IMG/VR virus record: IMGVR_UViG_3300023174_005338
Span: 1-64,000 of that record
Strand: one strand, 5' to 3'
DNA length: 64,000 nt
Below are positions 50,119 to 62,694 of this stretch, in pieces; position 1 is the stretch's first letter, and each line of letters begins with the position of its first letter. The notes under the pieces were generated by a model that was not told the DNA's origin, ran no database searches, and saw only the letters and a program-made list of their open reading frames with translations. The translations under genes were made by a program, and so were the position numbers.

Positions 50119-51314
50119 CAAACAAAATTGAACACTGTAGTTTTTGCGACAAACACAAGGATCTGGTTGGCAAATTGATTGTGAGTCAGGCAGTGGCCAT
50201 ATGCAACGAATGTGTGGCCTTGTGTGACAATTTGTTGAAAGACGTCAAACCCTCTACAAAATCCAAATTTAAACAGATTGGTGTGTTGGATCCCTTGGAC
50301 ATATTGATGTACCTTGATGAATACGTGATTGGACAAGATCAAGCCAAACGAGTGCTGGCAGTTGCCATTGCCAATCACTATAAGCGTATCAGCCGACCTG
50401 GCACAGATCTACAAAAGGTCAACATAATGATGCTTGGTCCCACCGGTACCGGAAAAACTTTGTTGGCTCGCACAGTGGCTCGATATTTGCAAGTGCCATT
50501 CGTGATTGCAGATGCAACTTGTTTGACCGAAGCAGGTTATGTAGGCGATGATGTAGAAAGCATGATAGCCAGATTATACACTGCTGCCAATGGAGATGTA
50601 GAAGCCTGTCAGCGTGGCATTGTGTTCCTGGATGAAATAGACAAAATTGCTAGAAAAGGCGAAAGTGCCACAGTCAGCCGAGATGTCAGTGGCGAGGGCG
50701 TGCAACAGGCTTTGCTCAAACTGATTGAAGGCACCCGTTGTAGGATTCCAGCACAAGGCTCTAGAAAAAATTCTGGCACAGAAATGATTGAAATAGACAC
50801 TGCCAATATTCTGTTTATAGCCAGTGGTGCATTTGTGGGTCTGGAGAGAATCATACAGAATCGAGTACAAGGCACTGCCATGGGATTTGGTGCACAGCTT
50901 GACCGCGCCATTGAATCAACCATGGAGAAAATTATACCCGACGATCTGGTCAGATATGGCATGATTCCAGAATTCGTGGGCAGATTTGGTAGTTGTGTGA
51001 ATTTACATGATCTTGACAAGTCTCAGTTGATCAATATATTGACACAGGTCCGGGGAAACTTTGTCAAACAGTATCAATGGCTGTTTGAAGAAGACGGAGT
51101 TGAACTCAACTTTGATGCAGAAAGTCTGGATATCATTGCCGAACGCACACTGAAAAGCCGAACTGGTGCACGTGGCCTGCATAGCGAACTTGAACGAGTG
51201 TTGTTGCCGCACATGTTTGATTTGCCACGCTATCGACGTCAAAATATACTGGCCGTCACGATCAATAAAACCCAGGTAAATACACCCATGACACTGGCAC
51301 AGGAAAATTCGTGA
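50115..51314 (+). CDS. clpX: ClpX unfoldase
   Basis: Zinc-binding [38 protein letters not shown] loop, TGARGL. Confidence 0.95.
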
Positions 51315-51532
51315 GAGAGTACAAGAGATCGGTAGTTGTCAAGGACGACAACGTGGAACGTGCTCTGCGCAAGTTCAAGAAAAAGATACAGGAATCCGGA
51401 CTCTTGGATGAACTGCGAGGTCGCGAAACCTACGAAAAACCCACCACTGAACGCAAACGCAAAAAAGGTGCGGCCCGTGCCCGCTGGCGCAAACGGCTGA
51501 GAGATCAGCAGTTGCCCAAAAAACTCTACTGA
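51311..51532 (+). CDS. rpsU: Ribosomal protein bS21
   Basis: [13 protein letters not shown]...[15 protein letters not shown]. Confidence 0.93.
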
Positions 51533-51533
51533 T

Positions 51534-51758
51534 GTGTTTGTAGAATTTGCATTGCCGCAGGACGAAAGCTACGGGTTCGTTTTAAATCTCGTTCGTCTTG
51601 ACATTGTAGATTGGGCAACTCGCTACAACATTCCTTACACACAAAAAACAATAAAATATACGCATAGACTGGCCTTTGACCAAGACCGTTTCTATACTGT
51701 GTTTGCCACGACTTGGAATAGCAAATTTGATTATCGACTCATTGACAGACGGTGGTAA
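51534..51758 (+). CDS. Hypothetical protein
   Basis: 74-aa ORF filling the gap. Confidence 0.55.
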   Translation: MFVEFALPQDESYGFVLNLVRLDIVDWATRYNIPYTQKTIKYTHRLAFDQDRFYTVFATTWNSKFDYRLIDRRW

Positions 51759-51772
51759 ATGTGTTATAAATA
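51742..51772 (+). promoter_or_regulatory. Overlapping sigma70 (TTGACA-17-TATAAA) and late (TATAAATA) promoters for hsp20
   Basis: Both motifs read directly. Confidence 0.65.
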
Positions 51773-51776
51773 TATT

Positions 51777-51837
51777 ATGTAGATGCCGATGGTCGGGTCT
51801 ACATAATGTCACTTGCTTATTAAAGGAGAAAACAATG
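51777..51837 (+). promoter_or_regulatory. ROSE-like RNA thermometer 5' leader
   Basis: Hairpin ATGTAGA..TCTACAT, then TTGCT-TATTAA-AGGAG pairing with the SD of hsp20. Confidence 0.6.
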
Positions 51838-52275
51838 ACAAAAATCACAGCTCTGGACCTCAGTCCATTTTATCGCAACTCAATTGGTGTAGATCGTTTG
51901 TTTGGTCGTATCATGGACCAGATTGATCATGCCAGCACCAACAACTATCCACCCTACAACATACTCAAGACCGGCGAAGATACCTTTGAAATACAGGTAG
52001 CAGTAGCAGGCTTTGGCCAAGGTGAGATTGATGTTGCTGTCAAAGACGGCGAACTTGTTATCACAGGTGAAAAACAACCCGAAGCCATGTTGGTAGGTAC
52101 TGAGTACCTACATCAAGGTATCAGTGCTCGTCGTTTTATACGCACATTTACCATGGCCGATTACGTAGAAGTAGTCTCAGCCGAGTGCAAAGACGGTATC
52201 CTTACAGTGTGTTTAGAACGCCGTGTGCCCGAGGCCATGAAGCCAAAGACCATTGCGATCACCTACGCAAACTAG
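51835..52275 (+). CDS. Small heat-shock protein Hsp20 (IbpA-like)
   Basis: IGVDRLF, YPPYNI, AVAGF, YLHQGIS.R.F.R.F, DGIL. Confidence 0.95.
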   Translation: MTKITALDLSPFYRNSIGVDRLFGRIMDQIDHASTNNYPPYNILKTGEDTFEIQVAVAGFGQGEIDVAVKDGELVITGEKQPEAMLVGTEYLHQGISARRFIRTFTMADYVEVVSAECKDGILTVCLERRVPEAMKPKTIAITYAN

Positions 52276-52333
52276 TATAATGTAGTAAATACAGTGGAGG
52301 GCATGGGCTCTCCACTACTAACAAGGATCCACG

Positions 52334-52642
52334 ATGTCGCAAGCTGGCACAGTCACAAAAACAAAAATCAATCACGACATGGCAGAACCACCCATGTTCA
52401 AGGTCATTTATCTCAACGACAATGCCACACCCATGGACTTTGTGATAGAAACACTGATAGACAGTTTCAACTACAATCAACAGACAGCAGTGCAGATCAC
52501 ACATGATATACATGAAGCAGGAAGTGCGGTAGTAGCTGTGCTTCCTTATGAAATAGCTGAACAAAAAGGCATAGAAGTCACAGTGCAAGCTCGCAGCAAC
52601 AACTATCCTTTACAGGTCAAACTGGAACCTGAAACAGTCTAA
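52334..52642 (+). CDS. clpS: ClpS N-degron adaptor
   Basis: PPMFKVIYLNDNATPMDFV, IHEAG, EIAEQK, YPL. Confidence 0.92.
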   Translation: MSQAGTVTKTKINHDMAEPPMFKVIYLNDNATPMDFVIETLIDSFNYNQQTAVQITHDIHEAGSAVVAVLPYEIAEQKGIEVTVQARSNNYPLQVKLEPETV

Positions 52643-53434
52643 TCAAATTTCTATCACTATTCTTTGTGGGTAATAAGCCTGTTGACACCACGTAGTGTGG
52701 CCACGTCCACGAGGATTGCTAACATATCTGATTCCGTTCAGATCTCGATCCACAGGTCTATGATAGTGCCCAAAACACCAGGTGTGTATTTTGTTTTCCG
52801 TATCTTTGCTCAGCACGCCAGAGATGTAACTATTGCCCATGCCGTTGTATCTCCAGTTGCCTATCAAGTCCGGATCATGTGACACAATCCAAGGAGCAGG
52901 CACAGTATGGCTGACTATGACCATGGCTCTTACTTCTCTGTGTGTTTGCAGTTTGCGTACACTGTTGATCATGTAAGCGGCATCATTGTAGGCCACTCCT
53001 GTTATGTTCGTGGCTGCGGCATTGTCTATTCCATGATGATCTTGTATGGCCTGCACACTGGATTCTACATCCATGCTGGGATCAAAATCATAGGTCCACC
53101 AACCATTGGTTCCTAACAGAGCCACGCCGTTGATTATGATCACATTGTCCTGCATGTAAACTACATTTTTTATGTGTTTGAGATCTGCGTCCAGATCCTT
53201 GTAACTGGCTCCCAGATCATCAAGATAATCTTTGTGTTCTTCGTTGCCGTCCACATAAAACACACCACCTGGATAACATTGACCAAGATGATCCAAAGTA
53301 TCCAACAAGCGTTCGCGGTTGCGGGCCACATCTCCGGCAACCACACAATAAGGACTGGTGGCCTGTCCGGCCCAGTCAAATGTATTCCAGGTTTCCACGT
53401 GTAGATCAGAAATTAAATCAAAGGCAAATTGCAT
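52643..53434 (-). CDS. Calcineurin-like metallophosphoesterase
   Basis: SDLH, AGDV, GNEEH (variant of GNH), SH, GHYH, NPRG. Confidence 0.85.
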   Translation of the reverse strand: MQFAFDLISDLHVETWNTFDWAGQATSPYCVVAGDVARNRERLLDTLDHLGQCYPGGVFYVDGNEEHKDYLDDLGASYKDLDADLKHIKNVVYMQDNVIIINGVALLGTNGWWTYDFDPSMDVESSVQAIQDHHGIDNAAATNITGVAYNDAAYMINSVRKLQTHREVRAMVIVSHTVPAPWIVSHDPDLIGNWRYNGMGNSYISGVLSKDTENKIHTWCFGHYHRPVDRDLNGIRYVSNPRGRGHTTWCQQAYYPQRIVIEI

Positions 53435-53460
53435 GATAACTATTTACAGAGGATTTGATC

Positions 53461-53811
53461 ATGAACATTATATTCAAAGAAAATTTACCAGCCACCGAGC
53501 AAAAATACACAGTGTTGGATCTGGATACTTTTGCCTTGCCCGACGGGTCATTGCACACTGCCTGTTGCGTGATTGAAAACATACCCATCGTTGAACTGGC
53601 AAGCACTGAAAATTTGAAAGAACTTCATGACAACTTGATCAAAAATTATGCCTTGAAAAACTGGAACTATTGTGAACAGGCCATAGAACATCTCATGGGC
53701 AAATGGGGCGGTGAGGTAGACAGTTTTTATGCTGAATTAAAAACACGCATAGGTCGGTTAAAAACACAGGATCTAGACGATAGTTGGAGCCCGGTTATAC
53801 CAAAAAGCTAA
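53461..53811 (+). CDS. Stand-alone homologue of the adenylyl cyclase C-terminal tail
   Basis: YTVLDLD...LH..LI..Y...NW...FY..L..RI...DDSW aligns by eye with the C-terminus of 58795..60810. Confidence 0.6.
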   Translation: MNIIFKENLPATEQKYTVLDLDTFALPDGSLHTACCVIENIPIVELASTENLKELHDNLIKNYALKNWNYCEQAIEHLMGKWGGEVDSFYAELKTRIGRLKTQDLDDSWSPVIPKS

Positions 53812-53859
53812 TCTAGATAAATACCCACATAACAACAAGACTCTAAAAAGGAGCTAAAA

Positions 53860-54138
53860 GTGGGTGAATTTTTCAAGCTAGTCGCAGAACTAGGATTTCC
53901 AATAGCGGCAGCAATCGCAGCCGGATACTTTGTATTTCTCACATTGAAGTTTATTCTTGCTGGTGTAACCAGCAGTGTAAAAGGCATGGCCGGCATCATC
54001 GGCGCCTTGGACAAGCGTGTGGCCACCATGAATCATGATGTTATGCGCATTGACACAAAAGTTTCGCATGCGCTGGGTCTACAACCTGACTTGGATCGCA
54101 TAGCTCGAGCTGAACAAAGTGACGCCAGGAGAGACTAA
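53860..54138 (+). CDS. YvrJ/holin-like membrane protein
   Basis: GFPIAAA.G.F TM plus coiled coil; paralog of 54761. Confidence 0.7.
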   Translation: MGEFFKLVAELGFPIAAAIAAGYFVFLTLKFILAGVTSSVKGMAGIIGALDKRVATMNHDVMRIDTKVSHALGLQPDLDRIARAEQSDARRD

Positions 54139-54279
54139 TGAACACTCAAGAGCGCTGGAACTACATTGCCAACAATGAAGAAATTATTCGTCAATACATG
54201 GCCATGCACGATGAAGAAGTCAAAACTCGTCAGCTGGTAAAGTTTTTAGACAAACAACCACCCCGACCAGAGGCACCCG

Positions 54280-54474
54280 ATGAGATACTATGATTACGAG
54301 TGGGATCTGGAACCCAATAGAATTCTACTAGATGCTGAACTCAATGTAGATGCATTGGGCTGGAAAGCCGGCGATTATTTTAAAGTTGCCAATGTTAATG
54401 GTCGTGCCATGTTGGTCAAAGTAGATCCACTGGAAAAATTTTTAAGAGACGGAGTTGGCAATGAAAAGATATGA
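54280..54474 (+). CDS. Small hypothetical protein
   Basis: LGWKAGD motif (AbrB-like); flanked by further small ORFs 54138..54293 and 54461..54583. Confidence 0.55.
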   Translation: MRYYDYEWDLEPNRILLDAELNVDALGWKAGDYFKVANVNGRAMLVKVDPLEKFLRDGVGNEKI

Positions 54475-54573
54475 TCCTTATCGTTTACCAATCAAACAAA
54501 TCTGGACCGACGGGGATTTGGCCAAGTTTGCCATGATAGCATTTGTAGCTGGTATTGTTGTGGGCGTAGTAGC

Positions 54574-54759
54574 ATGCCTTTAGAAGTAACCTACGCATTC
54601 ATTGGTTTTATCCTGGGCGGATCAGCCTTGATCGTCAGCCTGTATGTTTGGCTGACCCTAGATGAAGCATTGGAAAATGGCCGGGACTGGATCAAGCTCA
54701 ATCAAGAGTTAAGACAAAAAATTGAAAGCATGGAACGATCAACACCAGGAAAGAGATAA
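54574..54759 (+). CDS. Small membrane protein
   Basis: TM plus coiled coil. Confidence 0.5.
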   Translation: MPLEVTYAFIGFILGGSALIVSLYVWLTLDEALENGRDWIKLNQELRQKIESMERSTPGKR

Positions 54760-54760
54760 C

Positions 54761-55039
54761 ATGGATATTGTAACCTTAATCAACAAATACGGATTTCCCA
54801 TAGTGGCCGCTGGCGGCATGGGCTACTTGATTTTCTACGTGTGGAAATGGGCTACCACTGAAATCAAACCTGTGCTCAGTGAAGCCAACACCACCTTGAT
54901 TGCCCTGATAGATCGTATCCGCATGCTGGACAACGACCTGATCCGTCTCAATCAAAAGGTCAATGTGACCCTGCACCTGCGTGGCCGTAGCATCGAGCAT
55001 GAACGCCTGGCTCAAGACGAAATCATCAACAAGTCGTAA
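54761..55039 (+). CDS. YvrJ/holin-like membrane protein
   Basis: YGFPIVAAGGMGY; LIDRIRMLDNDLIR. Confidence 0.7.
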   Translation: MDIVTLINKYGFPIVAAGGMGYLIFYVWKWATTEIKPVLSEANTTLIALIDRIRMLDNDLIRLNQKVNVTLHLRGRSIEHERLAQDEIINKS

Positions 55040-55090
55040 AACCATCACTTAATAGCAGTATATTTCTAGTAAATACTACCAGGAGCTAGA

Positions 55091-55531
55091 ATGAAAAAAA
55101 TAATAATAAGTGTTCTGGCCAGCGTCGCTACATCCACGGTCAGCGCACAACTGGTACATCAGTTTAACTCGCCATCCTTTTCAGGATCGGGCTACAGCAG
55201 CCATGTCTTGACCATCGAGCAACTGGAAGCCACACGCCGTAAAGCCATAGCTGATGCACAAAAAGCCGCACAGGAAAAGGCCGAACGCGATGCCAAAAAT
55301 ACCAACTTGGCCAAGTTCTTGGTCAACGTGGAAAGTCGTATCTACGCACAACTTTCAAAACAGTTGGCAGATGCCATGTTTGCCGAAGGCGGTGCCAACT
55401 CTGGCAGTTTTGATTTCCAAGGCACCAACATCAGTTATGTGAAAACTGGCACAGATGTGACCTTGACCATCATTGAGGCCAACGGAAACAGGACCGAAAT
55501 CACTGTGCCCTTGTCGAGTTTTAGTTTCTGA
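55091..55531 (+). CDS. csgF: Curli assembly CsgF-like protein
   Basis: Signal peptide, LVHQFNSPSFSG (cf. F..PSFGG), RI..QLS, G..TEI.VP; directly upstream of csgG. Confidence 0.8.
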   Translation: MKKIIISVLASVATSTVSAQLVHQFNSPSFSGSGYSSHVLTIEQLEATRRKAIADAQKAAQEKAERDAKNTNLAKFLVNVESRIYAQLSKQLADAMFAEGGANSGSFDFQGTNISYVKTGTDVTLTIIEANGNRTEITVPLSSFSF

Positions 55532-56592
55532 TGCGTAGACTACTCCTAATCCTTCTTGTTGCTGTGTTGCCTGGCTGTGCTTACATACACATGGAAGTGG
55601 CACAGGAAGAGCCTGTGAAAGTCACGCCCAAACAAAATCTCATGGATCAGTTGCCGGTGTTGGATGGACCGCCCATGACCGTGGCTGTGTACGGATTCAG
55701 AGATCTCACTGGACAGAACAAACCCAATGACAGACTGGCCTTGTTCTCAAAGGCTGTGACACAAGGTGCTGAAGTGTTCTTGATCAAGAGCCTGCAAGAT
55801 TCCAAGAACTGGTTCCGTGTGGTAGAACGTGTGGGCCTGGACAACTTGATCAAAGAACGACAGCTGATCCGCAATCAGCGTGAAGTGTATGAAGGCAAGG
55901 AAGCCAAACCACTCAAGCCTTTGACTGTGGCTGGTATCTTGTTGGAAGGTGGTATTATTGGCTATGATTCAAACATCAGGTCAGGCGGTAATGGTGCCAG
56001 ATTCCTGGGCATAGGTGGTAGCCAGCAGTATCGTGTGGACGAAGTTACTGTAAGTCTTAGATTGATCTCAATCAGTTCAGGTGAGGTCCTGATGACCAAT
56101 GCTGTGACCAAGACCATATACTCAACAGCACACAATGTGGGCGTGTTGAGATTTGTGGATGCTGGAACCAAAGCCCTGGAGTTGGAGAATGGCCAAGCTC
56201 TGAACGAGCCCACTACCTATGCTGTGCGTGTGGCCATTGAACAGGCAGTGTATGAACTGATCACAGAAGGCCAGAAAAAAGGCCTATGGAGTTACAAGCG
56301 TGCTGAGGAGAAACAAAATGATGTCAAGCCTGCTGCAACAAATGCGCCGCCTGCAACAACAAGCGGCACAGAGACAAAAACAGAAACCGCAAAAACCGCC
56401 GCAGTCACAGTAATGCGGCTGCGCGAAGCATCATACATTTATCGCGATCCAGATGAACGCAGTCAACGCACCTGGATGCTGAAGGAAAACACAGATTTGA
56501 CTGTGACACCAGGCCAGAACGGCTGGGTTGCAGTGCAAGACTCAGCCGGTCGTCGGGGCTGGGTCAAAAGCGACAGGTTAATTCAGCCATGA
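55531..56592 (+). CDS. csgG: Curli secretion pore CsgG with C-terminal SH3b-like domain
   Basis: Lipobox LPGC; VAVYGFRDLTGQ.K, AVTQG, WFRVVER.GL.NL..ERQLIR, EGGIIGYD; tail GWV.V....GRRGWV. Confidence 0.92.
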   Translation: MRRLLLILLVAVLPGCAYIHMEVAQEEPVKVTPKQNLMDQLPVLDGPPMTVAVYGFRDLTGQNKPNDRLALFSKAVTQGAEVFLIKSLQDSKNWFRVVERVGLDNLIKERQLIRNQREVYEGKEAKPLKPLTVAGILLEGGIIGYDSNIRSGGNGARFLGIGGSQQYRVDEVTVSLRLISISSGEVLMTNAVTKTIYSTAHNVGVLRFVDAGTKALELENGQALNEPTTYAVRVAIEQAVYELITEGQKKGLWSYKRAEEKQNDVKPAATNAPPATTSGTETKTETAKTAAVTVMRLREASYIYRDPDERSQRTWMLKENTDLTVTPGQNGWVAVQDSAGRRGWVKSDRLIQP

Positions 56593-56698
56593 ATGCCTGT
56601 AAATATGTAAATGCGGCAATCGCATATTATAATAATAAGGTCGCAAAGACCAAGGAGCTGGTTGGAGAATAATAAAAACAAATCCAACCTGAAACAAG

Positions 56699-57325
56699 AT
56701 GGAAAAGAGAACGACAGGCATTGGCGGATTGTCGAGAAAATTATCCGCAATTCTGATGACAGCTGCGATGTGGTCATTGGGTGCTCAGGCTAACGAAGTT
56801 TATATTGAACAGGTAGGTAGCGGTTCGACCATAAACATCACGCAACAGGGCACAGACAATCGTATCGGTGACAGCACCACTCCGGCCTACATAGGATCGG
56901 GATCAAACACAGTGACCATAGATCAGATTGGTTCGACCAACACTCTGGACATGGTGGTCAACGGTGCCGGCACAGATGTGATAGTTACAACCACCGGTGA
57001 CAACAACACTCAAACTATCAACTGTGGAACCACAACATCAGCTGGCTGTAGCGGCAGTTATATCAAACAACAAGTCACTGGAGATTCGAACACTGTGACT
57101 CAGAATCTGGGGTCGGGTGCCAATCATACCAGTGAAATCAATGTGACCGGTGATAGTAACACAGTGACTCACACCAGCACAGCCACAGGTACCACTTCGG
57201 CCAATATTACTGTGACGGGCAATACCAACACAGTGGGCGTTACTCAATCAGGAATGTTGAACAAGAGTGTCACAGTTACCAGCACTGGCAATAGCAATAA
57301 CATTAGCATTACTCAGTCTGACTAG
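56699..57325 (+). CDS. Curlin-like repeat protein (CsgA/CsgB-like)
   Basis: Signal peptide ending AQA; repeated I.Q.G..N and TG.SN.V beta-arc units. Confidence 0.75.
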   Translation: MEKRTTGIGGLSRKLSAILMTAAMWSLGAQANEVYIEQVGSGSTINITQQGTDNRIGDSTTPAYIGSGSNTVTIDQIGSTNTLDMVVNGAGTDVIVTTTGDNNTQTINCGTTTSAGCSGSYIKQQVTGDSNTVTQNLGSGANHTSEINVTGDSNTVTHTSTATGTTSANITVTGNTNTVGVTQSGMLNKSVTVTSTGNSNNISITQSD

Positions 57326-58346
57326 TTGGGCCTCAGTGGGTCGCGTGGTTGAACAGACCGGCCCCACTGAAATAGTGCGCAACAAAAAGAGTCTGAGCAG
57401 TAGTGTGAATACTCCTGTGGAGATGCTGGACACCATTGTCACAGCTCGAGCCAAGGCCAAGCTGGAGTTTGTGGACAAGACCACGGTCAACATCACTGAA
57501 CAAAGCAAGATACTCATAGACGATTTCGTGTATGATCCCAAAGCCGGATCAGGCAAGCTGGCCATGAAGATGGTACAAGGCACTGCCAGATATGCGTCAG
57601 GTCAGATAGCCAAGAACTCACCACAGAATGTAAACATAACCACACCCACTGCTGCTGTGGCCGTGCGTGGCACAGACTTTTCCATGACCGTGGATGAACT
57701 GGGTCGTAGCCTTATCATGTTGTTGCCCAGTTGCGATGCTAAAAGTTGTGTGACTGGATCAATCAGTGTCAGCAACGATGCTGGTCTAGTCATTTTAGAT
57801 GTGGCCTATCAAGTCACGGTGGTGGCCAGCTTGTCAGCACCGCCCACAGCACCCACGGTGATACAGATTGATGCCAACAACATCAACAACATGTTGATCG
57901 TGGCACCCCCACCAGCAGTGCGTGAAGCCCTACAACATATACAACAAACAGCCTTGGACATTAATTTTTTAAACAAGGATCTGCTGAAGTTTGATGAACT
58001 GGATGTGAACTATCTTGAAAAGTTCAAAAGATTGGATGTGAACTTTTTGGATTTGGATTTCTTGGTCAATTTGTTGGATCTCAGCAACAAGCAGTTGAGT
58101 GCCAGCCTAGATGCCATGAGTCGTGAAGCCAGCCTGTTACCGGCCTATGATCCTAACTCTGGACTAAGGTATTTTTTCAACGAAGATGAAAGCAAGGTCA
58201 CTGTGAGACTAAACACAGGGCACATGGCCGAAGTCACTGTGGGCGTAGAACATGATGCTGTGGTGACTATAAATCAAGCAGGATGGGCAGTTACACAACA
58301 GATCAACCGTGGCGGAACCAGTATAATTAATATTATACAACGATAA
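57267..58346 (+). CDS. FecR-domain periplasmic protein
   Basis: Signal peptide; D.I.T, F.D.T.V.I.EQS...ID.FVYDP, G..RY.SG, TPTA...VRGTDF. Confidence 0.88.
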   Translation: MSQLPALAIAITLALLSLTSWASVGRVVEQTGPTEIVRNKKSLSSSVNTPVEMLDTIVTARAKAKLEFVDKTTVNITEQSKILIDDFVYDPKAGSGKLAMKMVQGTARYASGQIAKNSPQNVNITTPTAAVAVRGTDFSMTVDELGRSLIMLLPSCDAKSCVTGSISVSNDAGLVILDVAYQVTVVASLSAPPTAPTVIQIDANNINNMLIVAPPPAVREALQHIQQTALDINFLNKDLLKFDELDVNYLEKFKRLDVNFLDLDFLVNLLDLSNKQLSASLDAMSREASLLPAYDPNSGLRYFFNEDESKVTVRLNTGHMAEVTVGVEHDAVVTINQAGWAVTQQINRGGTSIINIIQR

Positions 58347-58356
58347 GGAGATAATA

Positions 58357-58521
58357 ATGGAAGGAACCACAATCAAGACTCTGGCTGAATATATTGCCAA
58401 ATTGAATCGTGACAATGCTGAATTCTTGAAAGAATACGAAAACGATCAATTTGATACCAATGGCGTTGAACAAGATCACATAGAAACATTCTGGCCACCC
58501 AATGAGCACCCCCGCACCTAA
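58357..58521 (+). CDS. Small acidic protein (54 aa, not in track)
   Basis: AAGGAG SD; MEGTTIKTLAEYIAKL... Confidence 0.55.
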   Translation: MEGTTIKTLAEYIAKLNRDNAEFLKEYENDQFDTNGVEQDHIETFWPPNEHPRT

Positions 58522-58666
58522 TTCTCCAGCACCTTGGTGTTGTTGGCCTGGTTGCACTCGACCTGCACAGATCTACGAAAATAGAAATATCAAAGGAGTA
58601 ACATCATATCTTAAAACCTGTGGCAAACACTGGTTACCAGGTGTTCACTCCAGAGCTAATCCATAA
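58502..58666 (+). CDS. Small Cys/His (zinc-binding-like) protein (54 aa, not in track)
   Basis: CCWPGC...TCGKH. Confidence 0.45.
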   Translation: MSTPAPNSPAPWCCWPGCTRPAQIYENRNIKGVTSYLKTCGKHWLPGVHSRANP

Positions 58667-58704
58667 TGTGCGTGTTGATCTTATCCAAGCTCAACCAGTA
58701 AATA

Positions 58705-58776
58705 CTGTGTCGATATAAAAACTATAAGGAATCGACCCAGCTACATATTCAAAAGCCCCCGCGAGGGGCTTTTTTT
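58705..58776 (+). ncRNA. Candidate small RNA
   Basis: TAAATA at 58699-58704, GTCGAT/ATCGAC hairpin with A-rich AAGGA loop, then terminator; no ORF. Confidence 0.45.
58751..58776 (+). terminator. Rho-independent terminator
   Basis: AAAAGCCCC-CGCGA-GGGGCTTTT plus T-run. Confidence 0.85.
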
Positions 58777-58794
58777 ATCTAAGTTAAATATAAC

Positions 58795-60810
58795 ATGCTG
58801 AAAAAAATCCTAACTAGCCCCTGGACTGCTCTAATAACATTGGCAGTTATAGTAGCAATACGCATAGCGGATCCTGCATTTGTAGAAAGTGTTCGCTTGC
58901 GTTATTTTGATACCTTGGTGACCAGCAAGCCCGCAGAAGTCACAGGTGTTCATGTTGTAAATATTGATGAAAAGGCTTTAGAACGATATGGTCAGTTTCC
59001 CTTCGCCAGAAATGTATATGCTGGCATCATCCAAGATCTTTATCGCCGCAACGCTGGTCTTGTTGTTTTTAATATTCTTACTCCTGATCGCGATCGCATG
59101 GGTCGCGATGCGGCGTATGTGGCGGCGTTGCAAAAACATGCTACGGTTCTTCCAAGCATAGGCAGCACAGCGACTCGTAACCAACCTAGGAATCCCGGAA
59201 GTGCGGTGATCGGTCCCCTGGATACTAACAATTTTGTGACCTATCCTGGAATCATTGCCAACATACCTGCTGTGGAACGTGCGGCCATAGGCGTAGGTAT
59301 CACTAACACCTTGCCCGAGATAGATGGTGTGGTACGTAGAATGCCCATGGTAGTGGCTGTTGATGGTAAGTTATATCCCAGTCTGGCCATGGAAGTCATG
59401 CGTGTGGCCGCAGGTGACTCGACTTTCCAAGTCAAAGTAAATGAACAGGGCGTGGAAAAAATGCGTATTCCACAGTTTGGCCCAGTGAGTACAGATAGCC
59501 TCAGCAGGATCTGGATTGACTGGAGCCTGACTCCAGAACGTCACGGCTTAACCGACTTGCCCCAGGACTTTGATGGCGAGATAGTTATTGTGGGAGTCAG
59601 TGCCGCAGGCCTGTCCAATCCTGTGGCCACCAGCCTGGGTGAGATGTTGCCACAAGACTTGCAAGCCGCTGTGATATCAACAGTGATAGCCAACAAGATC
59701 AGACCAGCTATTACTCGTCCTGACTGGGCAGATGGTGCAGAGATAATCACCTTGGTCGTGCTTGCGGTGACATTGATATTTTTAGGGAGATGGACCTATG
59801 TTGGTATTGCTGGCAGTGTTGTTGTCATTGGTATTTGTGTTTGGGTTCCTGGTGCTTTGTACTCGAGCCATGCTTGGCTCACTGACGTCACTTTGGTTGT
59901 TGGGGGTCTTGTTGCTGTGCTTCTGCATGCTTATGGAGTACGGTTTGTATCAGAGTATCTTGCTAAACAACAAATAAAGAAACAGTTTGGCACCTACTTG
60001 AGTCCGGCCATGGTCGAGAAACTTCAGAAGAATCCAGAACTGCTGAAGTTGGGCGGTGAAAGCAGAGAGTTGAGTATCATGTTCACTGATGTGCGTGGCT
60101 TTACTACCATCAGCGAACACTACGGTGCCGACGTTCAAGGACTGACCAAGATCATGAACAGATATATGACAGCCATGACCGCCAAAATCATAGAGAACGA
60201 AGGTACCTTGGACAAGTACATAGGTGATGCACAGATGGCATTTTGGAATGCACCCTTGGATGACGCTGATCATGCTGTCAATGCTGTGCGTACTGCTTTA
60301 CAAATGATGGAGAGTTTGGATGAGTTCAATCGTGAAATCAGTGCAGAAGGCATTCCGCCTTTTGGCATGGGCCTTGGCATCAATACTGGTACCGTGGTCG
60401 TTGGTAATATGGGCAGCGATCAGCGTTTTGATTACACCTGCCTTGGTGACAGCGTTAATCTGGCGAGCCGACTCGAAGGCCAGTCAAAACCTTATGGCGT
60501 TCGCATCATACTGGGACCGCGTACTAGTGAGCTTGTCAGAGATTCCTACCCAGTTGCGGAACTAGACTGCATAGCAGTAAAAGGCAAGACCGAAGGCGTC
60601 CGCATATATACACTGGCAGAAGAAACACAGTTGCACAAAGATTTTATCACCTTGTATTACGCTGGCGAATGGAAACAAGCACAGGCCTTGATTCCAGGAT
60701 GCATCAAAGCCTGCCCAGAACTGGAGGCATATTATGGGGCCATGGATGAACGACTTGCGGCAGGTAAGCCAGATGACTGGATGGGAACCTATAAGGCTAC
60801 ATCTAAATGA
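58795..60810 (+). CDS. CHASE2-domain class III adenylyl cyclase
   Basis: N-terminal TM; CHASE2 (VVNIDE..L..YGQFP..R, DGVVRR.P); three TMs; FTDVRGFT, DKYIGD, GINTG, DYT.LGD.VNLASRLE. Confidence 0.93.
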   Translation: MLKKILTSPWTALITLAVIVAIRIADPAFVESVRLRYFDTLVTSKPAEVTGVHVVNIDEKALERYGQFPFARNVYAGIIQDLYRRNAGLVVFNILTPDRDRMGRDAAYVAALQKHATVLPSIGSTATRNQPRNPGSAVIGPLDTNNFVTYPGIIANIPAVERAAIGVGITNTLPEIDGVVRRMPMVVAVDGKLYPSLAMEVMRVAAGDSTFQVKVNEQGVEKMRIPQFGPVSTDSLSRIWIDWSLTPERHGLTDLPQDFDGEIVIVGVSAAGLSNPVATSLGEMLPQDLQAAVISTVIANKIRPAITRPDWADGAEIITLVVLAVTLIFLGRWTYVGIAGSVVVIGICVWVPGALYSSHAWLTDVTLVVGGLVAVLLHAYGVRFVSEYLAKQQIKKQFGTYLSPAMVEKLQKNPELLKLGGESRELSIMFTDVRGFTTISEHYGADVQGLTKIMNRYMTAMTAKIIENEGTLDKYIGDAQMAFWNAPLDDADHAVNAVRTALQMMESLDEFNREISAEGIPPFGMGLGINTGTVVVGNMGSDQRFDYTCLGDSVNLASRLEGQSKPYGVRIILGPRTSELVRDSYPVAELDCIAVKGKTEGVRIYTLAEETQLHKDFITLYYAGEWKQAQALIPGCIKACPELEAYYGAMDERLAAGKPDDWMGTYKATSK

Positions 60811-60959: not shown

Positions 60960-61397
60960 CTAGTTGACAGGTATTCTCAGTCTAAAGCCAATGGCACTGG
61001 CACCTGTGCTGTCAACCCTAGGCAAAATCAAGGTACAGGCCCACTTATAACAGGCTTCAGGAAAGGCCATGGGCAACACTGCGGCACGTTGGTATCCAGT
61101 GACGGCACCCACAGCAATGCCAATATCCCAACCATCCTTTTTATAAACCGCATAACGACCATAGGCATAGGTGCTGCCACTGTATTCTGAATTGCGGTAC
61201 CAGCCTCCGGCTACAGATATCCTGTCGGTGATACCTTGCTCTAGTCCAGCACCCCAGTTGAAACCATTGTATCCAGACCGGTCATGGACACTGATGCCAT
61301 TGACCTGTACATAGGTTTGAGCCGACAAACTATTTGCAACGACAAAAAACAACACACCCAAACAGTATTTTGAATTGTATAGAATTTTTTTTATCAT
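60960..61397 (-). CDS. PagP-like outer-membrane beta-barrel
   Basis: Signal peptide; S.H.R..YN..NWG.G, Y.NS, G.VTGY, P. Confidence 0.55.
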   Translation of the reverse strand: MIKKILYNSKYCLGVLFFVVANSLSAQTYVQVNGISVHDRSGYNGFNWGAGLEQGITDRISVAGGWYRNSEYSGSTYAYGRYAVYKKDGWDIGIAVGAVTGYQRAAVLPMAFPEACYKWACTLILPRVDSTGASAIGFRLRIPVN

Positions 61398-61404
61398 GTA
61401 GAAA

Positions 61405-62694
61405 TTACTTTTTATCAAAATTATCAACAAAGTGTTGCATTATTTTAGGAAGGTTAGTAGTCGACCAATAATGTTGTAGTTCTGGCATCTTTTGTAGTTC
61501 AGCGAATCTGACAATTTCTTTTTCAAAGTCTGGATACATTTTAAGAGTGTCAAAAGCACAATCAAAGTTTTGCTTTAACTCATCTATCACAAAATTAAAA
61601 AAATTTTCACTAAAAAAATGTGTTTGATTATGAAGAACTATCTGTTCTATCTGTTGCATTTTACTGAATTTTTCTTCGGGGCTCCAGGCATTTATGGTTT
61701 TCATCAGCTGTATTATGGTCAGCATACGATCATAGGGATCCTCAATGCTGTCATAGCTTTCGTCCCAAACCAAGTCAAAGGTCTTGAATCCATATTCTTT
61801 CAAATACTGCAAACTGCCATGTGTGGCAACTAATATAAAAGGTTGACCGCATGCTATAGGACGTAGAATTTTTTCAGTCAAGTGTAATCGATCGTCATCG
61901 AACAAGGTTTCCAACACCACTTCGATTTCAGTGCAGTTATAATCTCTTGAATCAAAATCTCCACTGGCCGTAGACAAAGCAGTGGTCTTGGGCACATGAT
62001 GCTCCAGCACATGTTCTGGTCGCCAAACAGGATTATGAAAGTTATAGTCAGAGTAGTGTATATCTGTGTCGGAATCCACAGGGTTACAGTGGGTCAGGCA
62101 TTGATCAACCAGTTGATGCGTGATCAGTAGATCCGTAAATTTCAGTCTATATTCTCTGGTGCCGGTCCAGGCGCGATTGTATATTAAAAATTTCTTTTTG
62201 CTATTTTTCTTAAAAACTTCGTGTTGCGCATATCTAAACCAATCTCTAGCTATGATTGCATGACTCCAGTAGTAGACCGACAACAATTGACTTTGATGAT
62301 TGGCCGGAGGCTCGAGATATTTTTCTAAATTTTTTGACCTGCGTTCACTGTGCAGTAACAGGCTTTTACCAAATAAATTTTTTCGAAAATTTATGTTAAA
62401 GGCAGGTTTGGCCAAGTTCAGATCATTTAAAATTTGCACCAGTTTTGCGGGTAAAATATCGTCTGATTTTTGTTGTTGATTCAATCGTTCATAATCTAGT
62501 GCTTCTTGGTCGTGGCAAAAAACAATTGGCCATAAAAAATTTGCCAAAAAAGATTCATGTTCTCTCAATGGCAACAATTGATCAATATTTTTTGCACCAT
62601 CTGGATAAAAACGATAAATTAATACACGCCCATCATAGCTGTGACAGGCAATATTGTCAATAAAATGATACAGACTATCTAATGGAACACTCAT
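61405..62694 (-). CDS. GT-B/GT10-like glycosyltransferase-like protein, paralog of 15711..16799
   Basis: VVLET..LTEK..RPI..GQPF..L..YGFKTF..WDESYD.IED. Confidence 0.6.
   Translation of the reverse strand: MSVPLDSLYHFIDNIACHSYDGRVLIYRFYPDGAKNIDQLLPLREHESFLANFLWPIVFCHDQEALDYERLNQQQKSDDILPAKLVQILNDLNLAKPAFNINFRKNLFGKSLLLHSERRSKNLEKYLEPPANHQSQLLSVYYWSHAIIARDWFRYAQHEVFKKNSKKKFLIYNRAWTGTREYRLKFTDLLITHQLVDQCLTHCNPVDSDTDIHYSDYNFHNPVWRPEHVLEHHVPKTTALSTASGDFDSRDYNCTEIEVVLETLFDDDRLHLTEKILRPIACGQPFILVATHGSLQYLKEYGFKTFDLVWDESYDSIEDPYDRMLTIIQLMKTINAWSPEEKFSKMQQIEQIVLHNQTHFFSENFFNFVIDELKQNFDCAFDTLKMYPDFEKEIVRFAELQKMPELQHYWSTTNLPKIMQHFVDNFDKK

What the first reader, a model, noticed from the sequence alone, without database searches (positions are those of the whole stretch)
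52643..60810. Candidate phage-encoded trans-envelope cAMP signalling system: CsgF/CsgG-curlin-FecR-CHASE2 cyclase plus phosphoesterase
Seen: a contiguous, late-promoter-driven block encoding an outer-membrane CsgG pore with an extra SH3b-like tail, CsgF, a single curlin-like protein, a periplasmic FecR protein and an inner-membrane CHASE2 class III cyclase. The cyclase keeps both metal Asp residues, the adenine-specifying Lys/Thr pair and the Asn/Arg. Upstream are two holin-like paralogs, a free copy of the cyclase tail and a metallophosphoesterase. Known: CsgF/CsgG genes have been reported in some aquatic myophages, and FecR + CHASE2-cyclase modules act in bacterial surface sensing. Inference: with no CsgE/CsgC and only one curlin, this looks less like biofilm fibre export and more like an outside-in relay (pore/curlin, then FecR, then CHASE2, then cAMP, reset by the phosphoesterase). 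It could let the infected cell sense superinfection or surfaces and tune lysis timing or host CRP-type regulons.
Basis: partly seen in the sequence, partly recalled or inferred. Interest (0 to 1): 0.9.

Follow-up and report, generated by a model that had tools for sequence, protein, structure and literature searches.

The report
Phage curli module with cAMP sensor
A giant aquatic phage carries a gene cassette for a curli-type outer-membrane pore and fibre subunit, next to a membrane sensor that makes cAMP; the cassette was described in ocean phages in 2022, so this is a new member with some new details, not a new kind of system.

Summary
Two paralogous 92-aa membrane proteins lie upstream.

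The cassette is conserved. It is in most of 80 related viral contigs, in Pelagibacter phage HTVC008M, in Methylophilales phage Melnitz and in a Lake Baikal phage.

It is not new. Wittmers et al. 2022 (PMC9599517) described this viral T8SS + FecR + adenylate cyclase module.

The reading "signalling rather than fibre export" is only partly supported.
- For a relay: the FecR N-domain co-varies with the CHASE2 sensor. The nearest bacterial cyclases often sit directly after giant FecR-headed adhesins.
- Against demoting fibres: relatives carry a second, lectin-fused curlin.
- The phosphoesterase is an unrelated jumbo-phage backbone gene.
- "Holin-like" has only a weak 19-residue match, and the published "histidine kinase" label finds no support. 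The exact T4 late-promoter consensus is absent.
- A strong terminator separates the cyclase from the csg genes.

Verdict: a new member of a known, functionally untested module. The most likely function is adhesive curli display coupled to periplasm-to-cAMP sensing.

The parts
53455..53811 (+). 118-aa protein homologous to the C-terminal ~110 residues of the module's cyclases (free 'cyclase tail'). Accessory: found in 17 of 82 loci.
   Evidence: BLASTP to relatives' cyclase C-termini, best E 4e-8 over residues 2-112; E 0.007 to its own cyclase; tblastn hits to the tails of 4 bacterial cyclases; no Pfam hit.
53860..54138 (+). TMa: 92-aa single-pass membrane protein with a C-terminal helical region. 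Core module member (phrog_18771); by position it is the 'HK' of the 2022 paper.
   Evidence: phrog_18771 E 2.5e-35; one hydrophobic segment at residues 7-25; 2091 homologous protein clusters in metagenomes, none with a functional name (one carries an evidently spurious JGI label); no Pfam or NCBIfam hit even at E<=1; no invariant His.
54138..54759 (+). Small ORFs (51, 64 and 61 aa) inserted between the two TM paralogs. Not conserved as a set; function unknown.
   Evidence: ORF list; sequence; no Pfam hits. The Lake Baikal relative has one 56-63-aa ORF at this place.
54761..55039 (+). TMb: paralog of TMa. The ORF opens at 54722 (TTG), but the alignment of 57 homologs points to ATG 54761, giving 92 aa.
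   Evidence: phrog_18771 E 1.9e-32; 28% identity to TMa, E 2e-11; homolog alignment.
55091..55531 (+). CsgF with a signal peptide.
   Evidence: Pfam CsgF E 3.4e-15; phrog_35372 E 1.6e-49; N-terminal hydrophobic segment.
55531..56592 (+). CsgG outer-membrane lipoprotein pore (residues 1-265), Thr/Ala-rich linker and C-terminal SH3b domain (residues 303-350, nt 56437-56580).
   Evidence: Pfam CsgG E 9e-55 and SH3_4 E 1.8e-7; end-to-end alignment to E. coli CsgG, E 1.4e-51, with the lipobox Cys and the Phe of the constriction loop aligned; SH3b tails also in L004, L005, L048, L069 and L082.
56699..57325 (+). Curlin-repeat protein (208 aa) with a signal peptide and a ~21-23-residue repeat period. 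The only curlin gene in the window.
   Evidence: Pfam Curlin_rpt E 3.3e-9; weak CsgA/CsgB NCBIfam hits; repeat period from autocorrelation; tblastn of seven relatives' curlin-repeat proteins (mostly second, lectin-fused copies) and the window's own curlin hits only this gene.
57267..58346 (+). Secreted FecR-fold protein. Signal peptide; beta-rich FecR domain (residues 25-200); low-confidence Leu/Asp-rich linker (205-295); small six-strand C-terminal domain (300-358).
   Evidence: Pfam FecR E 1.6e-12; AlphaFold model with mean pLDDT 77; Foldseek matches to PupR 6ovk and BDI_1681 4m0h (E 1.5e-4) and to 5ix9 (E 5e-3); the C-terminal domain alone has no PDB match.
58357..58666 (+). Two overlapping 54-aa ORFs occupying the slot where most relatives have the second (often lectin-fused) curlin gene.
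   Evidence: ORF list; sequence; no Pfam hits; slot content in relatives.
58751..58773 (+). Intrinsic terminator (9-bp G+C-rich stem followed by a T run) immediately upstream of the cyclase gene.
   Evidence: Terminator scan; sequence.
58795..60810 (+). Receptor adenylate cyclase: TM1, periplasmic CHASE2 (residues 15-326), three TM segments (312-377), class IIIb catalytic domain (424-607) and a C-terminal tail (610-671).
   Evidence: Pfam CHASE2 E 1.5e-35 and Guanylate_cyc E 2.1e-21; alignment to CyaB 3r5g and others; residues D432, K474, D478, T548, N555 and R559; hydropathy.
52643..53434 (-). Metallophosphoesterase. A neighbour, not judged part of the module.
   Evidence: phrog_1649 E 2.6e-22; only weak TIGR03729 and no CpdA match; present in 8 of 82 loci; homologs lie in E. 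coli, Salmonella, Agrobacterium and Sinorhizobium phages (those listed are 348-490 kb jumbo genomes) that were not hit by the cyclase, CsgG, FecR or TMa searches.

Best explanation
This is a member of the viral type VIII secretion (curli) + FecR + adenylate cyclase module already known from marine pelagiphages. Here it sits in a 337-kb T4-like phage contig.

Proposed mechanism. During infection the phage gives its host an outer-membrane CsgG/CsgF pore. Curlin-repeat subunits are exported through it and form adhesive amyloid-type fibres on the cell surface. In most relatives a lectin-headed subunit is exported too; that gene is missing in this window. The secreted FecR-fold protein acts in the periplasm as the adaptor between this apparatus and the CHASE2 sensor domain of the inner-membrane cyclase. 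The state of the pore, fibre or periplasm is thereby converted into cytoplasmic cAMP.

Shown: the gene content, the conservation of the set, intact catalytic residues, and FecR/CHASE2 co-variation.

Inferred: fibre formation, the FecR-CHASE2 and FecR-T8SS contacts, the signal, and what cAMP then controls. The likely target is a host CRP-type regulator, because no cNMP-binding gene was found near any viral module.

The two 92-aa membrane proteins are obligatory members of unknown role.
For: - Domains and residues.
- Conservation: 533 confirmed viral relatives of the cyclase. In 50,697 phage records the TM protein, FecR, CsgG and the full-length CHASE2 cyclase occur only in the same six records, Melnitz x4 and HTVC008M x2; three other records match only part of the catalytic domain. 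The module is also in Lake Baikal phage MG198570.
- Export reading: second curlin-repeat proteins carry signal peptides and PA14/GLEYA or F5/8-type-C lectin domains. The CsgG lipobox and the constriction Phe are conserved.
- Sensor coupling: the Spearman correlation of pairwise distances between FecR-N and CHASE2 is 0.53. The partial Mantel r is 0.49 (p 0.001) after controlling for CsgG, CsgF, TMa and the catalytic domain. CHASE2 versus its own catalytic domain is only 0.13. The sensor half travels with FecR and CsgG while the catalytic half is swapped, e.g. in L067 CHASE2 is 80%, FecR-N 77% and CsgG 83% identical but the catalytic domain only 44%.
- Bacterial relatives: FecR-domain ORFs lie near 22 of 78 closest bacterial CHASE2 cyclases. 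Nine of them lie directly upstream on the same strand (gap of 110 bp or less). The eight directly upstream Bradyrhizobium/Methylobacterium ORFs are 1225-2098 aa; the two scanned (L097, L119) pair an N-terminal FecR domain with cadherin/Ig-type domains, and a third FecR protein 5.7 kb from its cyclase (L113) carries RTX repeats.
- Fold: the FecR model matches PupR-type periplasmic signalling domains. Part of it matches 5ix9, the periplasmic retention plug of an RTX adhesin (PMC5550230).
- Published: the module is expressed in ocean metatranscriptomes (PMC9599517). FecR + CHASE2 pairs are known in S. meliloti and Burkholderia.
Against: - No fibres have been seen. Buchholz et al. saw no clumping of Melnitz-infected cells (PMC9004378).
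- The coupling is not obligatory. The cyclase is often absent from podophage modules (PMC9599517).
- In this window a strong terminator precedes the cyclase. In the closest relative, L004, the csg block is inverted relative to the cyclase, so they are separate transcription units.
- In some loci unrelated genes split the module (L062).
- Co-variation can be inflated by linkage and shared recombination history.
- The similarity of the FecR C-terminus to curlin repeats is weak (hhalign P 0.006, probability 6%) and the fold search does not support it.
- The window lacks the lectin-curlin gene.
- No cAMP receptor was identified.
Confidence: 0.45

Rival explanations
1. Two independent functions that merely share a hypervariable island. 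The T8SS genes make fibres or an open pore for aggregation, superinfection exclusion or uptake. Separately, the FecR/CHASE2 cyclase raises host cAMP in response to some unrelated periplasmic cue, to reprogram CRP-type regulons.
For: - FecR + CHASE2 cyclase pairs exist in bacteria with no csg genes nearby: 0 of 80 loci had CsgG, CsgF, curlin or TM hits.
- Terminator before the cyclase.
- Inverted or split arrangements in L004 and L062.
- The cyclase is often missing in podophage modules.
- The region is a known hypervariable island (PMC7029224).
Against: - All parts co-occur across podo-, myo- and jumbo-size phages in marine and freshwater samples.
- FecR always lies inside the csg gene order, between the curlin genes.
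- FecR persists in podophage modules that lack the cyclase, which ties it to the T8SS as well.
- FecR-C co-varies with CsgF (partial r 0.37) and FecR-N with CsgG (partial r 0.21).
Confidence: 0.25
2. The module is a pure outside-in relay: pore/curlin as antenna, then FecR, then CHASE2, then cAMP, reset by the phosphoesterase. It tunes lysis timing through the holin-like pair, and fibre building is not its purpose.
For: - The relay direction (periplasmic sensor to cytoplasmic cyclase) is inherent in the domain order.
- FecR-CHASE2 co-variation.
- Bacterial adhesin-FecR + CHASE2 cyclase synteny.
- This window has only one curlin.
Against: - Lectin-curlin fusions and two curlins in most relatives.
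- The phosphoesterase is not a module member and has no cyclic-nucleotide phosphodiesterase signature.
- The holin assignment rests on 19 residues. No endolysin or spanin was identified in the block by the domain scans.
- Absence of CsgE/CsgC is the alphaproteobacterial norm.
Confidence: 0.15
3. The CsgG/CsgF complex is repurposed as an ungated outer-membrane channel, acting like a pinholin or secretin or as a route for macromolecule uptake. The curlin-repeat proteins are not secreted as fibres. This is the proposal of Buchholz 2022 and Zaragoza-Solas 2020.
For: - No CsgE gate is encoded.
- The constriction-loop residues Tyr and Asn of E. coli CsgG are replaced; only the Phe is kept.
- No clumping was seen in Melnitz cultures.
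Against: - It does not explain the conserved signal-peptide-bearing curlin and lectin-curlin genes, CsgF, FecR or the cyclase.
- An outer-membrane pore alone does not depolarise the inner membrane. This point rests on established knowledge, not on a test here.
Confidence: 0.1

Closest known systems
Viral T8SS (curli) module with FecR and adenylate cyclase of pelagiphages (Wittmers et al. 2022, PMC9599517; HTVC008M gp011-019; Melnitz gp97-104)
   Same: Same gene set and order: two small membrane proteins, csgF, csgG, curlin, FecR, then the CHASE2 cyclase. Identity to the window is 37% for the cyclase and 47-51% for CsgG; the locus survey gives 38-40% for FecR and 44-58% for TMa (36-47% and 44-58%).
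   Different: - The window is the first 64 kb of a 337-kb contig, not a ~140-kb pelagimyophage or a podophage.
- CsgG carries an SH3b tail.
- The second curlin gene is replaced by two small ORFs and a terminator.
- Three small ORFs are inserted between the TM paralogs.
- A free 'cyclase tail' gene lies upstream.
Alphaproteobacterial-type curli/T8SS operons (csgG, csgF, csgA/B without csgC, csgD, csgE)
   Same: CsgG, CsgF and curlin-repeat subunits with Sec signals, and no CsgE, CsgC or CsgD. An alphaproteobacterial origin was inferred in PMC9599517.
   Different: None of the 80 closest bacterial cyclase loci holds csg genes near FecR and the CHASE2 cyclase. The TM pair has no homolog in those loci and no non-viral source name among the 120 best of its 2091 homolog clusters.
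Bacterial FecR-domain protein + CHASE2 sensor pairs (S. meliloti SMc02177 next to cyaD1; Burkholderia BiofilmReg LysM-FecR + CHASE2 histidine kinase)
   Same: A periplasmic FecR-domain protein is encoded next to a CHASE2 receptor, and in S. meliloti the output is cAMP. The pairing is seen again here in 22 of 78 bacterial loci.
   Different: - In bacteria there is no T8SS alongside.
- In Bradyrhizobium and Methylobacterium the eight directly upstream FecR ORFs are 1225-2098 aa, and the two scanned carry cadherin/Ig-type adhesin domains.
- In S. meliloti the FecR-domain gene was not needed for plant-signal perception (PMC5498481).
LapA/MpIBP-type RTX adhesins with a periplasmic retention module
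   Same: Part of the phage FecR-fold model superposes on the MpIBP RIN plug 5ix9 (TM-score 0.74 normalised to the target, rmsd 0.9 A over 61 columns, E 5e-3). The logic is similar: a periplasmic domain is tied to a surface adhesin through an outer-membrane pore.
   Different: - The secretion route differs (T1SS/TolC versus T8SS/CsgG).
- Signalling there runs inside-out through c-di-GMP, LapD and LapG, not outside-in to cAMP.
- There is no sequence-level match.
- No tether through CsgG has been shown.
FecA-FecR-FecI cell-surface signalling
   Same: The periplasmic FecR-type fold matches PupR and BDI_1681 (E 1.5e-4).
   Different: No cytoplasmic anti-sigma domain and no membrane anchor beyond a signal peptide. 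No ECF sigma factor or TonB-dependent transducer appears among the block's ORFs that were scanned. An 'iron regulator' reading is therefore not supported.

Membership tests
Curli / type VIII secretion system | CsgG-family outer-membrane lipoprotein with a lipobox Cys and a channel constriction loop | tested here: met
   Pfam CsgG E 9e-55. NCBIfam CsgG 186 bits, but below the 505-bit equivalog cut-off. Alignment to E. coli CsgG over residues 1-276 with the lipobox Cys and the loop Phe aligned; the Tyr and Asn of the loop are replaced.
Curli / type VIII secretion system | CsgF partner protein | tested here: met
   Pfam CsgF E 3.4e-15, above the cut-off. No sequence match to solved E. coli CsgF at E<=0.01.
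Curli / type VIII secretion system | Secreted curlin-repeat subunit(s) | tested here: met
   Curlin_rpt E 3.3e-9; signal peptide and ~22-residue periodicity. There is only one such gene in the window.
Curli / type VIII secretion system | Formation of extracellular amyloid fibres | not testable with these tools
   Needs Congo red/ThT binding, EM or cryo-ET of expressing or infected cells.
Viral T8SS-FecR-AC module (Wittmers 2022) | Gene order: small 'HK' gene(s), csgF, csgG, csgA/B, FecR, (csgA/B), AC | tested here: met
   Window order matches HTVC008M and Melnitz and most of 80 viral loci. The second csgA/B gene is absent here.
Histidine kinase (published label for the small upstream genes) | HisKA/DHp with an invariant phospho-accepting His, and a HATPase domain | tested here: not met
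   The proteins are 92 aa. No Pfam or NCBIfam hit even at E<=1. The His at TMa position 59 is present in 36 of 51 sequences (Asn 12, Ala 3), and TMb has no conserved His.
Holins | Membership of a holin family, and a lysis-cassette context | tested here: inconclusive
   Only a 19-residue match of TMb to phrog_4898 (E 8e-4). No endolysin or spanin was identified in the block by the domain scans. Each protein has one moderately hydrophobic segment.
Class III (IIIb) adenylate cyclase | Two metal Asp, a substrate-specifying Lys + Thr/Asp pair, and transition-state Asn and Arg | tested here: met
   D432, K474, D478, T548, N555 and R559. Family-wide the pattern is DKDTNR in 45 of 78, DKDDSR in 31 and DKDSNR in 2. 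Enzymatic activity was not tested.
CHASE2 receptors | An extracytoplasmic CHASE2 domain between TM1 and a three-TM bundle, followed by a cytoplasmic output domain | tested here: met
   Pfam CHASE2 E 1.5e-35, residues 15-326. Hydrophobic segments at 4-22, 312-330, 340-358 and 359-377.
FecR-type anti-sigma regulators | N-terminal cytoplasmic anti-sigma domain, a TM helix, a periplasmic FecR domain, and partner ECF sigma and TonB-dependent transducer | tested here: not met
   Only the periplasmic fold is present. The N-terminus is a signal peptide. No sigma factor or transducer appears among the block's ORFs that were scanned.
Cyclic-nucleotide phosphodiesterase (CpdA-type) as module member | A specific family match, and co-occurrence with the cyclase | tested here: not met
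   Only weak TIGR03729 and no CpdA match. Present in 8 of 82 loci. Homologs are in phages that were not hit by the module-gene searches.

The most novel reading that the evidence does not exclude
The FecR-fold protein is a periplasmic retention or tether element, related in fold to the retention plug of RTX adhesins. It would physically connect the surface fibre or CsgG pore to the CHASE2 domain. The phage would thereby install a contact- or load-sensing adhesin whose engagement is reported as cAMP, for example on contact with neighbouring cells, particles or superinfecting phages. The same adhesin-FecR-CHASE2 cyclase logic would then operate in Bradyrhizobium-type bacteria as an unrecognised surface-sensing pathway.
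Probability: 0.2. Interest if true: 0.8.

Novelty: new member of a known kind. Interest (0 to 1): 0.45.

Why it matters
The module is abundant. Published estimates put viral curli proteins at about 0.1% of assembled viral proteins in the global ocean virome. Here the cyclase had 533 confirmed viral relatives and the small membrane protein had 2091 homologous clusters. It gives infected cells a surface structure and a second-messenger source that hosts such as SAR11 and OM43 lack. No experiment has yet addressed what it does.

This window extends the module to a 337-kb T4-like phage. Together with the Lake Baikal phage, it also extends it to freshwater relatives.

- the CHASE2 identity of the cyclase and its co-variation with FecR;
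- lectin-fused curlins in relatives;
- the lack of support for the 'histidine kinase' label;
- the adhesin-FecR-cyclase arrangement in Alphaproteobacteria.

Tried and rejected
- Near-identical DNA in cultured phages: none.
- T4 late-promoter consensus TATAAATA in the block: absent. The pattern CTAGWTAAATA was not informative.
- Histidine-kinase identity of the TM pair: rejected.
- Phosphoesterase as a cAMP 'reset' enzyme: rejected on family match and co-occurrence.
- FecR C-terminal domain as a curlin repeat: only weak profile similarity and no structural match, so left open.
- FecR C-terminal domain as the part matching the RTX-adhesin plug 5ix9: rejected. The isolated domain does not match, so the match lies in the N-terminal FecR fold.
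- Sequence-profile search of FecR against PDB: nothing meaningful.
- Bacterial operons combining csg genes with FecR and the cyclase: none among the 80 closest cyclase loci.
- cNMP-binding (PROSITE-pattern) proteins in the window and in all viral loci: none. A few lie near bacterial cyclases. This is a weak negative.
- tRNAs to infer the host: none in the window.
- The loci that seemed to have the cyclase without csg genes (L057, L058, L062, L064, L068, L075): in L062 this is explained by inserted unrelated genes that push the csg part beyond or to the edge of the 8-kb flank. The other five were not resolved.

Full report
WHAT IS THERE

The block 52643-60810 holds, on the + strand:
- a 118-aa ORF (53455-53811);
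- a 92-aa membrane protein, TMa (53860-54138);
- three small ORFs;
- TMb, a paralog of TMa (ORF 54722-55039; probable start 54761);
- csgF (55091-55531);
- csgG with a C-terminal SH3b domain (55531-56592);
- one curlin-repeat gene (56699-57325);
- a secreted FecR-domain gene (57267-58346);
- two 54-aa ORFs, then a strong intrinsic terminator (58751-58773);
- a CHASE2 + class III cyclase gene (58795-60810).

A metallophosphoesterase lies on the - strand at 52643-53434. These calls rest.

CsgG aligns over its whole core with E. coli CsgG, including the lipobox Cys and the Phe of the constriction loop. The cyclase has D432, K474, D478, T548, N555 and R559 at the six canonical class III positions, judged against solved cyclases such as CyaB. 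Its hydropathy profile is that of a CHASE2 receptor: one TM segment, the periplasmic domain, then three TM segments.

WHERE THE OBSERVATION NEEDS CORRECTING

- The exact T4 late-promoter consensus TATAAATA is not in the block. A shorter TAAATA core does precede TMa, csgF, the curlin gene and the cyclase gene. It is strongly enriched in non-coding DNA of the window (13 of 28 occurrences in 6.7% of the sequence, p 8.5e-9). A T4-like late promoter is plausible but not shown.
- The terminator in front of the cyclase means the cyclase is its own transcription unit. So does the inverted csg block in the closest relative, L004.
- 'Holin-like' rests on a 19-residue match.
- The 'free copy of the cyclase tail' is real. 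The 118-aa protein aligns over residues 2-112 with the last ~110 residues of relatives' cyclases (E 4e-8). The match to its own cyclase is weak.

CONTEXT

The window is the first 64 kb of a 337,119-bp IMG/VR contig. It carries T4-type replication genes: a UvsX-like recombinase, a DnaB/gp41-like helicase, nrdAB and a DNA ligase. The block is flanked by genes for an AAA ATPase, Hsp20 and ClpS upstream, and by a PagP-like gene downstream.

CONSERVATION

A scan of viral contigs with a three-sequence cyclase alignment gave 533 confirmed relatives, of which 80 loci were kept. Among these 80 loci plus the Melnitz and HTVC008M loci (82 in all), tblastn finds CsgG in 61, CsgF in 58, curlin in 67, FecR in 64, TMa in 65, TMb in 67 and a second curlin-like gene in 54. 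Most misses are contigs that end near the cyclase. In L062 the module is split open by inserted genes: an LpxH-like phosphoesterase, a porin, a UDP-glucose dehydrogenase and a peroxiredoxin.

In 50,697 phage records, TMa, FecR, CsgG and the full-length CHASE2 cyclase are found only in the same six records, Melnitz x4 and HTVC008M x2, and in the same order. Three other records match only part of the cyclase catalytic domain, and a 1.5-kb Salmonella phage fragment also matches CsgG. Lake Baikal phage MG198570 carries the whole set next to gp32, gp59 and a gp33-like late coactivator. The result that would have refuted the finding, non-co-occurrence, is therefore not obtained.

ALREADY KNOWN

csgF and csgG in pelagimyophages were reported in 2013-2020 (PMC7029224) and in Melnitz in 2022 (PMC9004378). 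Wittmers et al. 2022 (PMC9599517) explicitly described the full module in podo- and myoviral pelagiphages: 'HK' (one or two), CsgF, CsgG, CsgA/B, FecR, a second CsgA/B and an adenylate cyclase. They inferred an alphaproteobacterial origin and cross-family transfer, and showed expression in metatranscriptomes. They proposed superinfection defence, sibling capture or import as functions. It is the only paper in the library that combines phage, CsgG, FecR and adenylate cyclase. It does not mention CHASE2, lectin domains or jumbo phages.

1. The small 'HK' proteins are not detectably histidine kinases. They are 92 aa with one hydrophobic segment. They have no Pfam or NCBIfam hit even at E<=1 and no invariant His. 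They are the most conserved parts of the module: commonly 65-84% identical to the window in about half of the loci and 41-60% in the rest, versus roughly 45-58% for the CsgG core in most loci. They have 2091 homologous clusters in metagenomes, none with a functional name.

2. In relatives the second curlin-repeat protein is commonly a fusion. It has a signal peptide, then a PA14/GLEYA or F5/8-type-C (discoidin) lectin domain, then curlin repeats. This argues for export and adhesion. The window has lost this gene.

3. The cyclase catalytic domain comes in two types: DKDTNR in 45 of 78 (including the window) and DKDDSR in 31 of 78 (including Melnitz). Both metal Asp, the Lys and the Arg are invariant. 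The type is uncoupled from the lineage of the CHASE2 half. In L067, for example, CHASE2 is 80% identical to the window but the catalytic domain only 44%; L014 shows 57% versus 85%.

4. Pairwise-distance analysis over 50 loci shows that the FecR N-domain co-varies best with CHASE2 (Spearman 0.53). The partial Mantel r is 0.49 (p 0.001) after controlling for CsgG, CsgF, TMa and the catalytic domain. CHASE2 correlates only 0.13 with its own catalytic domain. Linkage may contribute, but CHASE2 is physically closer to the catalytic domain than to FecR.

5. The closest bacterial cyclases are 31-38% identical and mostly alphaproteobacterial. None of the 80 loci has csg or TM-pair genes nearby, while 22 of 78 have a FecR-domain ORF. 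Nine of those lie directly upstream on the same strand. The eight in Bradyrhizobium and Methylobacterium are 1225-2098 aa. The two of these that were scanned (L097, L119) have an N-terminal FecR domain followed by cadherin-like/Big_9 or Ig-like adhesin domains. A third FecR protein, 5.7 kb from its cyclase (L113), carries RTX repeats.

6. The AlphaFold model of the phage FecR protein (mean pLDDT 77) has a confident FecR-fold domain, a low-confidence Leu/Asp-rich linker and a small C-terminal beta domain. Foldseek matches PupR and BDI_1681 (E 1.5e-4). It also matches 5ix9, the periplasmic retention plug of the RTX adhesin MpIBP, with E 5e-3 and rmsd 0.9 A over 61 columns. The C-terminal domain alone matches nothing. 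Its resemblance to the last curlin repeats is weak.

7. The phosphoesterase has no cyclic-nucleotide phosphodiesterase signature. It accompanies the module in 8 of 82 loci. Its homologs are in 36 records of E. coli, Salmonella, Agrobacterium and Sinorhizobium phages (those listed are 348-490 kb jumbo genomes), none hit by the module-gene searches.

8. No cNMP-binding pattern was found in the window or in any viral locus. Several occur next to bacterial cyclases.

MECHANISM

Most likely (confidence 0.45), the module is a curli-type adhesive fibre system joined to a periplasm-to-cAMP sensor. CsgG/CsgF export the curlin-repeat subunits. The FecR-fold protein is the periplasmic adaptor to the CHASE2 domain. 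The cyclase then makes cAMP, which presumably acts through a host receptor.

Shown: gene content, conservation, intact catalytic residues and FecR/CHASE2 co-variation.

Inferred: fibres, physical contacts, the nature of the signal and the target of cAMP.

Rivals:
- two independent functions co-located in a hypervariable island (0.25);
- an ungated pore for lysis or uptake (0.10).

VERDICT

The finding is a new member of a known, functionally untested module. Its particular features are a 337-kb T4-like phage context, an SH3b-tailed CsgG, loss of the second curlin, and a separately transcribed cyclase.

Interest is moderate (0.45). The most novel reading still open is a phage-installed contact-sensing adhesin tethered through a FecR-fold domain to a CHASE2 cyclase, with a bacterial counterpart. 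I give it a probability of about 0.2; it would be of high interest if true.

Noticed in passing
window 50115-52642: A proteostasis-type gene cluster lies directly upstream of the block: an AAA ATPase/protease-like gene (50115-51314), Hsp20 (51676-52275) and a ClpS-like adaptor (52334-52642). Hsp20 and ClpS sit beside the module in 18 and 11 of the 82 loci. A link to handling amyloid-prone subunits is conceivable but untested.
   Followed up: partly
window 60960-61430 (-): A PagP-like lipid A acylation gene (phrog_3600, E 7e-16) lies just downstream of the cyclase. It is another envelope-modifying gene, present in only 3 of the related loci.
   Followed up: partly
L006, L035, L062, L002 (HTVC008M gp018), L054, L059: Second curlin-repeat proteins are fused to PA14/GLEYA or F5/8-type-C (discoidin) lectin domains and have signal peptides. 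The papers read do not mention this.
   Followed up: yes
viral cyclases of L001-L082 (alignment): There are two catalytic-domain types, DKDTNR and DKDDSR; in the second the transition-state Asn is replaced by Ser. They are exchanged independently of the CHASE2 sensor half, which suggests recombination at the membrane/catalytic junction.
   Followed up: yes
L084, L095, L096, L097, L101, L105, L119, L121 (Bradyrhizobium, Methylobacterium): Giant (1225-2098 aa) ORFs with a FecR-domain match end 19-110 bp upstream of the CHASE2 adenylate cyclase, on the same strand. In the two scanned with Pfam (L097, L119) the FecR domain is N-terminal and is followed by cadherin/Ig-type adhesin domains. This may be an undescribed adhesin-linked cAMP sensing pair in bacteria.
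   Followed up: partly
L035 5921-7945: A 674-aa protein with an autotransporter beta-domain is inserted between the lectin-curlin gene and the cyclase in one relative.
   Followed up: no
L062 1242-7535: The module is split by inserted genes: a 682-aa protein with no Pfam hit, an LpxH-like metallophosphoesterase, a phosphate-selective porin O/P, a UDP-glucose dehydrogenase fragment and a peroxiredoxin. Downstream of the cyclase lie a radical SAM gene and a D-Ala-D-Ala carboxypeptidase. The island collects envelope-related genes.
   Followed up: partly
window 51765-51772: One of only four exact T4-type late-promoter consensus sequences (TATAAATA) in the window. It lies inside the listed ORF 51676-52275 (Hsp20). 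The homology to Hsp20 begins at residue 66, so the real start may be downstream of the motif.
   Followed up: no
window 54461-54759: The small ORFs between the two TM paralogs include hydrophobic, probably membrane-spanning peptides, e.g. the 61-aa ORF 54574-54759. The Lake Baikal relative has a single 56-63-aa ORF in the same place.
   Followed up: no
L005, L048, L069, L082, L004 (CsgG genes): SH3b tails on CsgG recur in a minority of relatives. Many other CsgG homologs carry 40-110-residue C-terminal extensions with no recognisable domain.
   Followed up: partly
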